Shown one piece after another: positions 22,421-27,151 of a stretch of 64,000 nucleotides of DNA. The notes below the pieces were generated by a model. It searched no databases and was not told where the DNA came from. It worked only from the letters and a program-made list of their open reading frames with translations. The stretch is from Chlorokybus atmophyticus. Its lineage: Eukaryota; Plantae; Mesostigma and Chlorokybus algae. The stretch is taken from assembly GCA_009103225.1 (NCBI GenBank), contig RHPI01002069.1, positions 459,378 to 523,377 of the forward strand, read 5' to 3'. A program made the translations under genes and the position numbers. The first letter of the stretch is position 1, and each line of letters begins with the position of its first letter.

Positions 22421-23768
22421 TTATATCGGAAATGCGCAAATCGCACTACAAAAGGGTTTGTGCAAATACATGGCACGCGTGGCATGCAACAAGCACAAGT
22501 GAGCAAGATTCGGCGGGGGCCAAAGTAGGTTTTACTAAGTTGGCAACTTTTAAGACAAACACGCTAGCTAAACTCTACCCAAAACTTTGGGCTCGACCCT
22601 CAAGCGGCAGCACGCAAGGGTCACCCATACGATGTGGGCGTGCACGAAAGTATGGTTCGTGCTGACGACCTCAGGTTGATTGCTTGAGCCATTGCTGCTT
22701 GTTGCCAACTGCCTGTCCCATTGCCACTGCATTGCACAGCATACAACAGCATTTATGGTAGCAAGTACGTGGCCTCGAGTGTATGATTAGCTGCCTTTGC
22801 TTGTCGTGCCTGCTCTGCTTGCCCTCATATGCATCTTTGCCTGAGGACGCATGTTTCTGCATGACATACCACAATCTATACCCCATAAACAACAACACAC
22901 ACAACAGTTGTATACGGCCGCATGTGCCTTATGGATTGCATGTAATGCCATCACGCACTTCACCACACCGTTCTCATAAGTAAACGGAAGCAGATTTCGC
23001 CCCAAGGGAAGAACTTTCAACTGCACCTGACTTGCTACACCTATTGCACGACATGCTTGCGTGTGTGTAATGCAACATGTGCACCAGGTCATAAGGTGAG
23101 GAGGAACGAGGCAACAACTTGCAGCTCATGGGGCCAGCATGCGCTGAACATGTAATAGCCGTATATGCTGAATAGGTGACCCTTCAATCAAAATTGCAGA
23201 AGACAGAAATATCCAAACCGAACAACTGCTCCCCACAATGTTCCCCCCACCCCATTATTGCAATTCAATGCACAGCGACAAAGCATGGAGTTGTGTAAAT
23301 GACATGGCGTGCTGGCGTGCGTATGAGTTTACTGGTGCAGTGTGATGGTGCATAGCTTTGTATGACAATGTTGCTGTACTAGTAAATTCACACGAATGAA
23401 CCCAATCGATTCATGCCCTCGTGAATATGGAATTTGCACAGTTAGCAAAGGAAGGGAAACTATGCAGATTCCAGGCACATAGGATTGATGTACATCATCT
23501 TTTAGGAAAAACACTGGCGGAAGACTTCAGGGGGGAATACAATTCGACATACAATTTGCATCCAAACACCTATAAACAATGGTTCTTCCTGCACACATCT
23601 GATAAACTCTGTGAGGACGGATTGCATAGGGCAAAACCATGCCGATGGTTTGGCCAAATGAAACAGCTTTGATGAAGCACTAGACTACCTGGAGCACGTG
23701 AACAATGCCACGAATGTACAACACATTGGCAATTCGAGGGCAAAAAGTGTTGCATGGGCTGAAAGAAC

Positions 23769-26700
23769 TCAATACCCCTCATCAGAAGTGGTAACGGAGG
23801 TATGAAAGGGAAGCCACTTGCGAGCAAGTTTGGCTGCTATTGAGTGGTCTGCTTGACCAAAAGCATATGAGAATCCGTAGATCTTCAGCTCCCCCGCATC
23901 AGCGTCATGGTCCATGCGCCCGCCCCCAAGCGGAGTAACCTGACACAGTGCAATGCTTGTGCAAGATGCCAAAAGACACGCAACCACTGCACCCCTGAAC
24001 CCTCCATTGAGCTGGTGATATTCAAACAGCAGTACGGGTGGCGTGGTGTACTGAGCATACCTCAATGCTGATGAGGCCAAACTCTTGCCGCTCCTTGTTG
24101 AAAGCATTCAGAATATCTTGATGGTATTCAGCATTGGAACTCCCCCGTACAATCTGCAGACGCACACGTGAGAGGTCATCATCACTTGTGAACGCTGTCC
24201 ATGGCTATCTACAGCAAGTGTCATACCACGCGCTCCCTTCCCAGGTGGTCTTTGATTACGACAGCTATGTACTTAAATATGCCTGCAACATCACCAACCT
24301 TGCATCACCAACCTTGCCGCCACTATCACCATTACACATTGTGCAACATCTTACTGTTGCAGCACCTTCATCTATAACAAACGGATCCAGTTGCTGAAAC
24401 AAATCGTCCTTGGCAGGTTGACCCTCCGCTAGCCACTCGTCAATGAGAACCCTTGAGACAGAAAAGGGCGCGGGCATAGAAAATGGTCTGCACAAATGCA
24501 CTGAGTTCAGCATGGCAAGCAAGCGCTGTCTGGCAAAACTGAAACACTAAAATCCGGCCAAAATCAATTTGTCAACTGTAAAGGTAAGCACCTCCCAAAC
24601 AGTAGAGAAAAGTCAGCATTGCGGCGGGTCAACGCTGTCCTTAGCCAATCCTTGTGGAACCACCGCACATCCTGCAGTGCGGCCAACCTAGCTGAAAGTG
24701 AAGCGGGTGTGCTGCACTAAATAGCACACAAACAAGACCATGACTGACCTGGAGCTCCTTGCCATCCGGCTTAGGTGGTGGTGGGGTGCTTGGTGAAGAC
24801 GCATCTGCCACGGCGCTAGCGGTGAAGCCTACCATCAACGAAGAAGGAAATGGCCAGGGCTGGCTGCTATGGTACCTGCGCAAGGACGCTCTCAGGCAAA
24901 TACTAATAGAGTGCAGCGACCAAAGTCATCAAAAAGTAGACAAGCCAATGGCAAATAGGCGCCTGTCAATGCTCAAGCGTGACCGATTCGCAGCAACTGG
25001 TCTTGCAACACACCTGACTGAATCAGGGTCAACTACTACATTAGCCTCTTCCGACACTTCTCTGACAACACTCATCTCCATGGTTTCACCAATCTCTGCA
25101 AACATGCATTCGCTGGTCAGCACCTTTGACAGAAGCCTAAAAGAGTACAAGCCACTTGCCTGCAAATCCTGCAAGAATTGAATAACGCCCATCTGCCCAG
25201 CGACCCTGCAAACATTGATCAAGAGTCAAAACGGTGTGTCAGCAGGCTACATGTACAACGACAACAGCTTGGAACATGACACACCAACAATGGTCCTCAG
25301 CAGTTCGTACTGTCTGCATGCTGTCTGTATGCACGACACAAACAAATGCCATAACAGTAGCTAACCTGATGACCCAGCAACACATAGTCACTACTTGAAA
25401 CCCGCATGATGACAGCTGGGTCCTGCACAGGAACGTGTGCAGGCTTGTGTTAGAACAGAATAGAGTGAGGACCGCACGGGCGGGATGCGCATTGGACTGA
25501 AGCACAACTTGCCATGCGAGGATGATGTGACGAACCACAGGCTGAGTTGCTGCACTTTAGGGCATGCCCAGCGCTCCTAGGTTCTGTTATCGACCCACAT
25601 CGCCCACAGAAAGCCTAGTGGGACCCCGAGCACGTGTCTCGCAGTGATAGTCGTGCAATACTGCAGACAACTTATATCATAGAGCGTGACAACTGACCTG
25701 ATTCCTCTGCCACTCTGTCATACCACGTGCGTATGCGAGTAAGGCAGCGTCCACAAACGGCAACTGTGGCCCTGCAGATCGAAGGTCTGCCAACTGCGCA
25801 TCATTGCCGCCAAGTTCCTCTGGTGTCAACCCTTGCCTGTAATATCAAAGCCGCGTAATTGTCGTGGAGTACACCTCGCTAATGAGTAATCCTGATCCTG
25901 TGACTTGCAAGCAATGTATGCAGCCTAGCAATGCACTTGCCCAGGGCTGGCCTCGAAGTCTACGGCGAACAACGGCGTGTTGTCCGCAGATAGGCCGAGG
26001 AATATTGGTCGCAGCTGAGCGAGTTGGACTGGCAGCTTGCCTGCTTGCAACAAAATAGCTTGCAACCTGTCGCCTTTGGTCACCAGGTTCTTGCCTTTCC
26101 AGATGGGCACCACCTGAAGTGGACCAAGTCCTTAGAATGAGTTTGTCACATATGGTGTATCATACAAATGCATCCTGTCAGGGAAGTCTGTTGTTGAACT
26201 AACCCAACCATGGGTACGACTGCAGGTGTGCACGCACGAGGCTAGTAGACGAGCTCATTGCCGATGACATCCAATCGGCATCTTCGCGCAAGATGGACTC
26301 CCTTCTCAAGGCGTGATCGGCATAAAACACAGTCTGCTTGCGGACAGCAACATGAGTGTCTTGAACATCAAGCTCTGAACATTGCAGCTGGTTACCAAGT
26401 AGCAGCTTACACGCATTGGTAATAGTTTTGGCTGAGCTGCAATCTGCGTTGGTGCTGCGGTTGCCACTGTTGCCACCCAACGGTTTCCTGCAGTTGAAAT
26501 CATAGGACGCATGCAATTAGTTTACATGTATTTGAGGCCTGACGACAAGCTGGCACCCTCTGCATTCATACTGCATGTGTCCATACTACGCTGAACGTCA
26601 CTTCCGCCGGCATGACAAGCTGCACAGGCATGTCGACAACGCGCACAGTATGACGCGACCGTGAAGACGAAAAGCGAGCAGACGCAACATCAAGGAAGCT

Positions 26701-26910
26701 ACGAGTTGCAGGGTGCAAGGCATGCATGCAAACGAGGACAGGTGGCACCAAGTTGCCAGTGCAAAGCGCACCACGCAGTCGAGGGGGACAACGCCGGCGA
26801 TCAGGTGTCCGCACAACCACGGCGGCAGCACCAAAAGCCAGGCGACGGGCAGCCAACGACGGTCCTCCCCACCCCAGTGCTGTTACAGCGGCGGCGGCAG
26901 TGCCCGCCAT
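23769..26910 (-). CDS. NudC/NUDT12/NUDX19-type NAD(P)H pyrophosphatase fused to a C-terminal PHPT1 (Janus/Ocnus) phosphohistidine phosphatase domain; N-terminal organelle-transit-like peptide
   Basis: Zn ribbon FCGRCG...KCSNSAC, HPRMDPAVIM, Nudix box GFAEIGETMEMSVVREVSEEANV, YHSSQPWPFPSSLMVGF, ELQDVRWF, PAPFSVSRVLIDEWL. The same exon (24487-24366) continues to DPFVIDEG, then IFKYIAVVI, IVRGSSNAEYHQDIL, LGGGRMDH, KIYGFSYAFGQADHSIA...SDEGY* (TGA 23769-23771). All junctions checked in phase. Confidence 0.9.
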
Positions 26911-26961
26911 GCATGCGCAACAGCACAATGGAGCTCACTGGCTCTGCTCACACAATCCTAC

Positions 26962-26970
26962 TTAGGGTTT
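26962..26970 (-). promoter_or_regulatory. telo-box-like motif in the 241-bp bidirectional promoter between the NudC-PHPT1 and TRAIP-like genes
   Basis: + strand ttagggttt between divergent ATGs at 26910 and 27152. Confidence 0.4.
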
Positions 26971-27151
26971 CGTTGCTGGAAGCTGAAACGGACTGAGTTT
27001 TGAAGCGTTTGAAATGTTTGAGAAGGTGCAAAACTGTGCAAGCCAGCGGCGGCGGCGGCGGCGGCGGTGCCGCCGGCGAGGTGATGGAGGTAGTGGCTGG
27101 CGTGCGGCGTAGTAGTAGGCATCCCAGAGGCTTGTGCTCAGAGACGTTGCC

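What the first reader, a model, noticed from the sequence alone, without database searches (positions are those of the whole stretch)
23769..26910. In-frame fusion of a NudC-type NAD(P)H pyrophosphatase with a PHPT1/Janus phosphohistidine phosphatase
Seen: one exon (24487-24366, minus) carries both the NudC C-terminal helix (PAPFSVSRVLIDEWL) and the first PHPT1 strand (DPFVIDEG), with only AEGQPAKDDLFQQL between and no stop. Upstream (AG|A at 24592/24487) and downstream (24366/24282, 24227/24153, 24061/23939) junctions are canonical GT-AG and in phase. Established: SQPWPFPxS plus the Zn ribbon mark the NADH pyrophosphatase / NAD-cap decapping family. The PHPT1 residues matching human K21 (FKY), R45 (IVRG), catalytic H53 (AEYH), R78 (GGGR), S94 and H102 are all present. 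Exon 1 (MAGTAAAAVTALGW...RRCPPRLR) looks like an organelle transit peptide. Inference: I know of no described protein with this architecture. It could couple NAD(P)H turnover to phosphohistidine signalling (e.g. organellar NDPK or succinyl-CoA synthetase pHis). It could also act as a two-step eraser: Nudix cleavage of a nucleotidylated or ADP-ribosylated residue, then removal of the remaining phosphate. The Nudix box has Asn in place of the terminal Gly (EEANV).
Basis: partly seen in the sequence, partly recalled or inferred. Interest (0 to 1): 0.9.

Follow-up and report, generated by a model that had tools for sequence, protein, structure and literature searches.

The report
Known green-lineage NudC–PHPT1 fusion enzyme
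This is a real, single, spliced gene of the alga Chlorokybus that joins an NAD(P)H-cleaving Nudix enzyme to a phosphohistidine-phosphatase domain, but the same fusion is conserved across green algae and non-flowering land plants and was already noted in a 2016 paper, so it is an untested known family rather than a new architecture.

Summary
A 15-exon minus-strand gene (CDS 26910-23769) encodes a 519-aa protein with four parts. These are a basic, acid-poor N-terminal presequence, a NudC-type NAD(P)H pyrophosphatase (NUDIX-like, Zn ribbon, NUDIX, SQPWPFPSS), a short linker, and a full PHPT1/Ocnus domain.

The novelty claim fails, for three reasons:
- The published Chlorokybus proteome already predicts the fusion (Chrsp17S02838).
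- At least 45 retrieved proteins carry NudC followed by Ocnus. They come from Mesostigma, Mesotaenium, Spirogloea, Chlamydomonas, Volvox, Gonium, trebouxiophytes, liverworts, Sphagnum, Selaginella, Psilotum and Cryptomeria.
- Maruta et al. 2016 (PMC5118724) described this as "SQPWP subgroup II" with an additional Ocnus domain.

- The catalytic residues of both domains are invariant in 34 of 34 family members.
- In a model of the Mesostigma orthologue the linker has low confidence, which suggests a flexible tether.
- The deposited gene model is wrong at three GC-AG introns. It loses the Zn-ribbon exon and the start of the Nudix box.

Function and any coupling between the two domains remain untested. 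The scan's earlier notes did not contain this fusion.

The parts
23588..26944 (-). Extent of the spliced mRNA seen as one RNA contig (5' UTR 34 nt, CDS, 3' UTR 181 nt)
   Evidence: table 8: X1 record 1 is 1775 nt with 0 other letters. 1775 equals the sum of the 15 exons extended to these ends.
23769..26910 (-). CDS of 519 codons plus stop, in 15 exons: 26910-26772, 26487-26411, 26333-26238, 26113-25941, 25836-25698, 25614-25513, 25422-25366, 25205-25160, 25095-25014, 24875-24749, 24671-24592, 24487-24366, 24282-24227, 24153-24061, 23939-23769
   Evidence: model and phases. table 5: all 14 joints, allowing for the stated cut shifts.
26411..26910 (-). Exons 1-2: N-terminal presequence, residues 1-72 (Ala/Arg-rich, one acidic residue). 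Inferred to be an organelle targeting peptide.
   Evidence: composition; orthologues have comparable basic, acid-poor extensions. (TargetP 'Mit' for Ocnus-bearing family members in Maruta et al.).
25698..26333 (-). Exons 3-5: NUDIX-like N-terminal domain of NudC-type enzymes (PF09296)
   Evidence: E 1.6e-4 and 2.2e-5 on single exons. (P0001, E 2.2e-12).
25513..25614 (-). Exon 6: Zn ribbon (PF09297) with four Cys (C211, C214, C229, C234). This exon is missing from the deposited gene model.
   Evidence: E 8.8e-8. (absent from P0001). (piece 25512-25613 lies in the RNA contig).
24592..25422 (-). Exons 7-11: catalytic NUDIX domain. The Nudix box lies at 25169-25160 plus 25095-25037 (residues 274-296, ending EEANV). 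The SQPWPFPSS motif lies at 24865-24839.
   Evidence: G274, E280, R288, E289, E292 and E293 are invariant in 34 of 34; position 295 is G in 31 of 34.
24366..24487 (-). Exon 12, the junction exon: NudC C-terminal helix, a roughly 14-aa linker and the first PHPT1 strand in one open frame
   Evidence: joints 24487/24592 and 24282/24366 in X1 and X2, and the X1 contig is continuous across the exon.
23772..24390 (-). PHPT1/Janus-Ocnus domain (PF05005), residues about 406-519, on exons 12-15. The catalytic His443 codon is at 24123-24121.
   Evidence: (E 1.2e-24). (human PHPT1, E 3.3e-12, end to end). (K417, Y418, G436, H443, G468-470, S487 and H495 in 34 of 34).
25939..25940 (-). GC donor of intron 4 (GCAAGT). 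Introns 6 (25512-25511) and 8 (25159-25158) have the same GC donor.
   Evidence: sequence. table 5: joint 25095/25160 is listed CT..GC; joints 25421/25512 and 25831/25936 fit GC-AG within their stated shift; the deposited model departs from the RNA at exactly these three places.

Best explanation
What it is: the Chlorokybus member of a known, conserved Viridiplantae family, NUDX19-type 'SQPWP' subgroup II. One mRNA encodes a presequence, a NudC-type Nudix NAD(P)H pyrophosphatase and a C-terminal PHPT1-type domain.

Shown here: the single spliced transcript, the domain identities, the conservation of the fusion across green algae and non-flowering land plants, and the invariance of the catalytic residues of both modules.

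Inferred:
- The protein is imported into an organelle. Mitochondrion and chloroplast cannot be told apart here.
- The Nudix module hydrolyses the pyrophosphate bond of NAD(P)H, and possibly of NAD-capped RNA, as NudC, NUDT12 and AtNUDX19 do.
- The PHPT1 module uses His443 as a general base to hydrolyse P-N phosphoryl groups (phosphohistidine, phospholysine, phosphoramidate).
- The two act as independent catalytic units held together by a flexible tether of about 15-25 residues. The fusion would then give co-localisation and equal dosage rather than substrate channelling.
For: Transcript: one search shows a 1775-nt RNA contig with all 14 introns removed and no mismatch, and a second study supports the same joints.

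Domains: searches give the Pfam assignments. One search gives the end-to-end alignment to human PHPT1. One search shows that the NudC part of the Mesostigma orthologue hits NUDT12 (E 4.7e-33) and NudC.

Structure: searches cover the AF2 model of orthologue P0004. Both modules have pLDDT above 90 and the linker (residues 372-396) mostly falls below 60. Foldseek TM-scores by target are 0.81-0.85 to NUDT12/NudC and 0.90 (rmsd 1.6 A) to PHPT1 2HW4.

Conservation: searches show the catalytic residues of both modules in 34 of 34 members. retrieve 45 proteins, always in the order NudC then Ocnus, from chlorophytes to a conifer. These include transcript-derived ORFs such as a Psilotum Trinity contig.

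Single origin: all 39 fusion Ocnus domains fall in one group (SH-aLRT 86), which is consistent with one ancient fusion.

Literature: searches show that Maruta et al. 2016 describe the family and its predicted organellar targeting.
Against:
- The tether-only reading rests on low pLDDT in one model of an orthologue. No inter-domain error map was available, and pTM 0.71 does not exclude a defined packing.
- Retention of the fusion across the whole green lineage (chlorophytes and streptophytes) hints at more than co-localisation. So does the loss of the whole gene, rather than one domain, in 'higher plants' as reported by Maruta et al., which I did not re-test.
- The Gly-to-Asn change in the Nudix box is untested.
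Confidence: 0.72

Rival explanations
1. The two modules are mechanistically coupled. Either they act in sequence on one substrate, or one regulates the other. An example of sequence: NADPH is cut to NMNH plus 2',5'-ADP, and the PHPT1-fold domain then removes a phosphate. Examples of regulation: NAD(P)H occupancy of the Nudix module gates pHis phosphatase activity, or a pHis-bearing partner such as NDPK or succinyl-CoA ligase is the shared target.
For: The fusion is very old and rarely broken. Both active sites are invariant. A semi-conserved W-x-G-D motif lies in the linker of most members (W in 23 of 34, G in 22 of 34). Subgroup II was reported lost as a whole in angiosperms.
Against: PHPT1 chemistry, from established knowledge, is specific for P-N bonds, and the known Nudix products carry only phosphoesters. 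The linker is poorly conserved in this protein (D-L-F-Q replaces W-x-G-D) and has low confidence in the model. Micromonas subgroup II enzymes lack the domain. Short Ocnus-only proteins occur inside the fusion clade in Ostreobium and Botryococcus.
Confidence: 0.15
2. Two neighbouring genes, or alternative transcripts, merged by the reader and by assemblers. The cell would then make a stand-alone NudC and a stand-alone PHPT1, for example from Met377 in exon 12.
For: Logan contigs cannot exclude minor isoforms. In run X2 the transcript is in two contigs that abut inside exon 12, and depth is higher on the 3' piece (18.9 against 11.8). An in-frame ATG exists at codon 377.
Against: The NudC C-terminal helix and the first PHPT1 strand share one exon with no stop. 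Run X1 has one uninterrupted contig across it. Retaining intron 11 would truncate NudC before its conserved C-terminal helix. The X2 break, at about 24430, lies downstream of Met377, so it would not give a functional start. The same fusion is found in 45 proteins from many species.
Confidence: 0.03
3. One module is a catalytically dead binding or regulatory domain: a pseudo-phosphatase, or a Nudix disabled by the G-to-N change in EEANV.
For: The Nudix box departs from consensus at position 295. Chlorophyte members have lost Zn-ribbon cysteines, and volvocine members have Trp at the position of PHPT1 R45.
Against: In this protein every metal-binding or catalytic Glu/Arg of the Nudix box, all four Zn cysteines and all PHPT1 active-site residues are present, and they are invariant across the family. 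Selaginella also has Asn at position 295.
Confidence: 0.05

Closest known systems
SQPWP (AtNUDX19-type) subgroup II enzymes of Maruta et al. 2016, e.g. Klebsormidium kfl00032_0450, Physcomitrella Pp3c14_12120, Chlamydomonas Cre13.g582476
   Same: Same domain order: NUDIX-like, Zn ribbon, NUDIX with SQPWPFPxS, then a C-terminal Ocnus domain. Same kind of N-terminal presequence and the same C-terminal -GY ending. The Chlamydomonas protein was retrieved here as P0077.
   Different: Nothing architectural. Chlorokybus was not in that survey. This member keeps all four Zn-ribbon cysteines, which chlorophyte members have lost, and has Asn for Gly in the Nudix box.
Arabidopsis AtNUDX19 (SQPWP subgroup I), an NADPH pyrophosphohydrolase of chloroplasts and peroxisomes
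   Same: The same three NudC-type domains and the SQPWPFPxS motif.
   Different: AtNUDX19 has no Ocnus domain and ends in a PTS1-like tripeptide. The window protein ends in EGY and belongs to the other subgroup.
Human/mouse NUDT12 and bacterial NudC (PDB 6SCX, 6O3P, 8ZB3, 5IW4)
   Same: Fold and sequence of the N-terminal three quarters: phmmer E down to 4.7e-33 and TM by target 0.81-0.85 for the Mesostigma orthologue. From the literature, these enzymes are NAD(P)H pyrophosphatases and remove NAD caps from RNA.
   Different: None of them carries a PHPT1 domain. NUDT12 has N-terminal ankyrin repeats and a peroxisomal signal.
Human PHPT1 (14-kDa phosphohistidine phosphatase; PDB 2HW4, 2AI6, 2NMM) and Drosophila Janus/Ocnus
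   Same: End-to-end alignment with equivalents of K21, R45, H53, R78, S94 and H102. The orthologue model superposes at 1.6 A with 40% identity.
   Different: PHPT1 is a free-standing cytosolic protein of 125 aa. Here the domain is the C-terminal module of an organelle-targeted 519-aa enzyme.

Membership tests
NudC-type NADH pyrophosphatase (SQPWP group) | Nudix box GX5EX7REUXEEXGU | tested here: met
   Residues 274-296 match at every catalytic position. The only departure is Asn for the penultimate Gly.
NudC-type NADH pyrophosphatase (SQPWP group) | SQPWPFPxS motif downstream of the Nudix box | tested here: met
   SQPWPFPSS at residues 308-316; conserved in 32-33 of 34 family members.
NudC-type NADH pyrophosphatase (SQPWP group) | NUDIX-like N-terminal domain and four-Cys zinc ribbon | tested here: met
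   PF09296 and PF09297 hits on single exons. C211, C214, C229 and C234 are present.
NudC-type NADH pyrophosphatase (SQPWP group) | NudC/NUDT12 fold | tested here: met
   Tested on the Mesostigma orthologue P0004, not on the window protein: Foldseek TM by target 0.81-0.85.
NudC-type NADH pyrophosphatase (SQPWP group) | Hydrolysis of NADH, NADPH or NAD-capped RNA | not testable with these tools
   Needs an enzyme assay. No subgroup II member has been assayed in the papers found.
PHPT1 / Janus-Ocnus (PF05005) | Significant match to the family profile over the whole domain | tested here: met
   P0001 scores E 1.2e-24 over profile positions 5-102 of 108. The last exon alone scores E 8.9e-12.
PHPT1 / Janus-Ocnus (PF05005) | Catalytic His (human H53) and phosphate-binding residues (K21, R45, R78, S94, H102) | tested here: met
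   Aligned to 2AI6. K417, H443, S487 and H495 are in 34 of 34 members, R435 in 29 of 34 and R471 in 30 of 34.
PHPT1 / Janus-Ocnus (PF05005) | PHPT1 fold | tested here: met
   Orthologue model against 2HW4: TM by target 0.90, rmsd 1.6 A.
PHPT1 / Janus-Ocnus (PF05005) | Phosphohistidine or phosphoramidate phosphatase activity | not testable with these tools
   Needs an assay on pHis peptide or phosphoramidate, with an H443A control.
SQPWP subgroup II (Maruta et al. 2016) | NudC-type enzyme with an additional C-terminal Ocnus domain, found in green algae and non-flowering plants | tested here: met
   Architecture. Closest relatives are fusions from Mesostigma, Mesotaenium, Spirogloea, bryophytes and others. 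Family definition. No tree including subgroup I was built.

The most novel reading that the evidence does not exclude
The fusion is functionally obligatory, in one of two ways. Either the PHPT1 module is the green lineage's organellar P-N phosphatase and is gated by NAD(P)H binding or turnover in the Nudix module, which would link organellar redox or nucleotide state to phosphohistidine relays such as NDPK, succinyl-CoA ligase or chloroplast sensor kinase. Or the two modules complete one degradation route for NADP(H). In either case, loss of the whole gene in angiosperms would mark the loss of a pathway.
Probability: 0.15. Interest if true: 0.7.

Novelty: already known. Interest (0 to 1): 0.27.

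Why it matters
As a discovery of a new architecture it does not stand. The fusion is annotated in this genome, is common in Viridiplantae and was noted in print in 2016.

What remains worthwhile:
- The 2016 paper linked the extra domain only to Drosophila testis proteins. The papers I could search do not connect it to phosphohistidine phosphatase chemistry.
- Both active sites are invariant across the whole green lineage, so the family is a well-defined and experimentally tractable candidate for an organellar pHis/P-N phosphatase in plants and algae. Genetic models are available: Chlamydomonas Cre13.g582476, Physcomitrium Pp3c14_12120 and Marchantia.
- The corrected gene model is a practical annotation fix for this genome. 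Three GC-AG introns restore the Zn ribbon and the Nudix box.

Tried and rejected
- Reads search: the look-up of sequencing runs was busy three times before it answered.
Domain tests therefore used single exons, the deposited (imperfect) protein P0001 and the Mesostigma orthologue P0004. The structural results are for the orthologue.
- Literature: searches for 'phosphohistidine phosphatase + Nudix + fusion', 'PHPT1 + NudC + plants' and 'PHPT1 + Arabidopsis + phosphohistidine' gave nothing relevant. Only 'Ocnus + NUDIX' found the key paper.
- Rejected, two adjacent genes: see the RNA contig and the conservation of the fusion.
- Rejected, intron-11 retention as a normal NudC terminus: it would remove the conserved C-terminal helix.
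- Not examined: whether angiosperms truly lack the family, whether Chlorokybus also has a subgroup I or a free PHPT1 gene, and the neighbouring genes beyond noting a separate transcript below 23428.
- The scan's earlier notes held nothing on this fusion.
Full report
**1. What is in the sequence**

Reading 27200-23500 on the minus strand and translating the three frames gave a 15-exon model.
- The CDS runs 26910-23769 and encodes 519 codons. All exons are in phase.
- Eleven introns are GT-AG. Three have GC donors, all GCAAGT: intron 4 after 25941, intron 6 after 25513 and intron 8 after 25160.

**2. Transcript evidence**

Two RNA runs from two studies hold 35-40% of the sampled words of 23600-27000. 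That is roughly what exons alone would give.

Laid on 23300-27150, run X1 contributes one contig of 1775 nt with no mismatch.
- Its pieces run from 26944 to 23588.
- Its 14 joints coincide with my 14 introns, once the tool's stated cut ambiguity is allowed for.
- 1775 is exactly the sum of my exon lengths with the first exon extended to 26944 and the last to 23588.

Run X2 shows the same joints in two contigs that abut inside exon 12, at about 24430. Depth falls to zero between 23557 and 23429, so the next transcribed unit is separate.

The fusion is therefore made as one spliced mRNA. Contigs cannot rule out minor isoforms. No start or end pile-ups were reported.

**3. Domain identity**

- Pfam on single exons gave NUDIX-like (exons 4 and 5), Zn_ribbon_NUD (exon 6, E 8.8e-8), NUDIX (exon 9, weak) and Ocnus (exon 14, E 5.6e-4; exon 15, E 8.9e-12).
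- The C-terminal 131 residues align from end to end with human PHPT1 (2AI6, E 3.3e-12). FKY, IVRG, AEYH, LGGGR, the Ser of the phosphate loop and the following His are all matched.
- The NudC part of the Mesostigma orthologue hits NUDT12 (E 4.7e-33), Mycobacterium NudC and E. coli NudC.
- An AlphaFold2 model of that orthologue, built on a 30-sequence family alignment, has mean pLDDT 81 and pTM 0.71. Both modules are above 90, and the segment between them (residues 372-396) mostly falls below 60.
- Foldseek places the N-terminal module on NUDT12/NudC (TM by target 0.81-0.85). It places the C-terminal module on PHPT1 2HW4 (TM by target 0.90, rmsd 1.6 A, 40% identity).

**4. Whose gene it is, and how common the fusion is**

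A phmmer search of 1.84 billion representatives with the last exon found a 485-aa protein at 100% identity (P0001). It also found many proteins of 400-800 aa with the match at their C-terminus.
- All ten that I scanned carry NudC-type domains plus Ocnus.
- P0001 is jgi/Chlat1 Chrsp17S02838, so the window is Chlorokybus and the fusion is already predicted in its proteome.
- In total, 45 retrieved proteins have both modules, always in the order NudC then Ocnus.

Named sources:
- Streptophyte algae: Mesostigma, Mesotaenium, Spirogloea.
- Chlorophytes: Chlamydomonas (CHLRE_13g582476), Volvox, Gonium, Parachlorella, Symbiochloris, Myrmecia, Trebouxia.
- Bryophytes: Marchantia, Calypogeia, three Sphagnum species.
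- Vascular plants: Selaginella, Psilotum (a Trinity transcript ORF) and the conifer Cryptomeria.

In a tree of Ocnus domains, all 39 fusion domains fall in one group of 48 rows (SH-aLRT 86). This is compatible with a single ancient fusion. A few short Ocnus-only proteins from Ostreobium, Botryococcus and metagenomes sit inside that group. They may be fragments or later fissions.

**5. Prior description**

A full-text search for 'Ocnus' plus 'NUDIX' returned one paper: Maruta et al., Sci Rep 2016 (PMC5118724).
- It divides AtNUDX19-type 'SQPWP' enzymes into two subgroups.
- It states that all subgroup II enzymes except those of Micromonas have an additional Ocnus domain, and that subgroup II is ancestral and was lost in higher plants.
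- Its Figure 1a draws the Klebsormidium protein.
- Its Supplemental Table S1 lists the Ocnus coordinates for Klebsormidium, Physcomitrella, Coccomyxa, Chlamydomonas Cre13.g582476 and Volvox. TargetP predicts 'Mit' for each, and the proteins end in -GY.
- The authors relate the domain only to Drosophila testis Janus/Ocnus proteins. They do not mention phosphohistidine phosphatase.

No later paper on subgroup II was found. No paper linking PHPT1 to plants or to NudC was found either.

- *Conservation.* In 34 family members the Nudix residues G274, E280, R288, E289, E292 and E293 are invariant, and the SQPWPFPxS motif is nearly so. The PHPT1 residues K417, Y418, G436, H443, G468-470, S487 and H495 are also invariant, with R435 in 29 of 34 and R471 in 30 of 34. 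Both modules are therefore under the selection expected of active enzymes.
- *The EEANV variant.* Asn at position 295 is a rare variant, shared with Selaginella. The family has Gly in 31 of 34.
- *Gene model.* The deposited model differs from the RNA at exactly the three GC-AG introns. It inserts eight spurious residues between exons 4 and 5. It skips exon 6, the Zn ribbon. It truncates exon 8, the start of the Nudix box. The RNA-supported protein has 519 residues, not 485.
- *Presequence.* The N-terminal 72 residues have 1 acidic, 11 basic and 18 Ala residues. Comparable extensions precede the NUDIX-like domain in most complete orthologues.

**7. How it most likely works**

Shown: one transcript, two intact and conserved catalytic modules, and a low-confidence linker.

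Inferred from the families:
- The Nudix module cleaves NAD(P)H, and possibly NAD caps on organellar RNA.
- The PHPT1 module hydrolyses P-N phosphoryl groups with His443 as general base.
- The presequence sends the protein to mitochondria or plastids.

I favour independent modules on a flexible tether. Known Nudix products carry only phosphoesters, whereas PHPT1 is a P-N hydrolase.

Mechanistic coupling cannot be excluded (about 0.15). The age and stability of the fusion argue for it. So does the reported loss of the whole gene, rather than one domain, in higher plants.

**8. Verdict**

The claim of an undescribed architecture is refuted. The functional proposals remain speculation. The gene is a member of a known but biochemically untested family.

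Noticed in passing
window 25939-25940, 25511-25512, 25158-25159 (minus strand): Three of the 14 introns of this gene use GC-AG with the identical donor GCAAGT. The deposited gene model fails at exactly these three places. If GC donors are this frequent elsewhere in the genome, other published models may be damaged in the same way.
   Followed up: partly
window 23300-23428: A separate, well-covered RNA contig (X1 depth 170; also in X3) lies just beyond the 3' end of the gene, after a gap with zero depth at 23429-23557. It is a neighbouring transcribed unit that I did not identify.
   Followed up: no
window about 24430 (exon 12): In run X2 the transcript is assembled as two contigs that abut inside the junction exon, with higher depth on the 3' piece (18.9 against 11.8). 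This is most simply 3' bias or an assembly break, but it is the one place where a shorter isoform could hide.
   Followed up: partly
related proteins P0028, P0043, P0049, P0052, P0077 (Volvox, Gonium and Chlamydomonas are the named ones; P0043 and P0052 are unnamed) and other chlorophytes: These five members have Trp at the position of PHPT1 R45. Most chlorophyte members have also lost three of the four Zn-ribbon cysteines, whereas streptophyte members, including this one, keep them.
   Followed up: partly
related proteins P0031 (Ostreobium, 142 aa), P0055 (Botryococcus, 220 aa), P0047 and P0060 (metagenomes): Ocnus-only proteins sit inside the clade of fusion Ocnus domains. They are either fragments of fusion genes or secondary fissions, and this was not resolved.
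   Followed up: partly
window 27038-27070 (minus strand, about 100-160 nt upstream of the RNA contig's 5' end at 26944): A (GCC)n run, CCGCCGCCGCCGCCGCCGC, lies upstream of the gene. The reads tool skipped 27038-27150 as repeat.
   Followed up: no
P0154 (Cryptomeria japonica), P0092 (Psilotum nudum), P0167 (Selaginella): The fusion persists in a conifer, a fern ally and a lycophyte. So the 'loss in higher plants' reported in 2016 may be specific to angiosperms. Angiosperms were not searched specifically.
   Followed up: no
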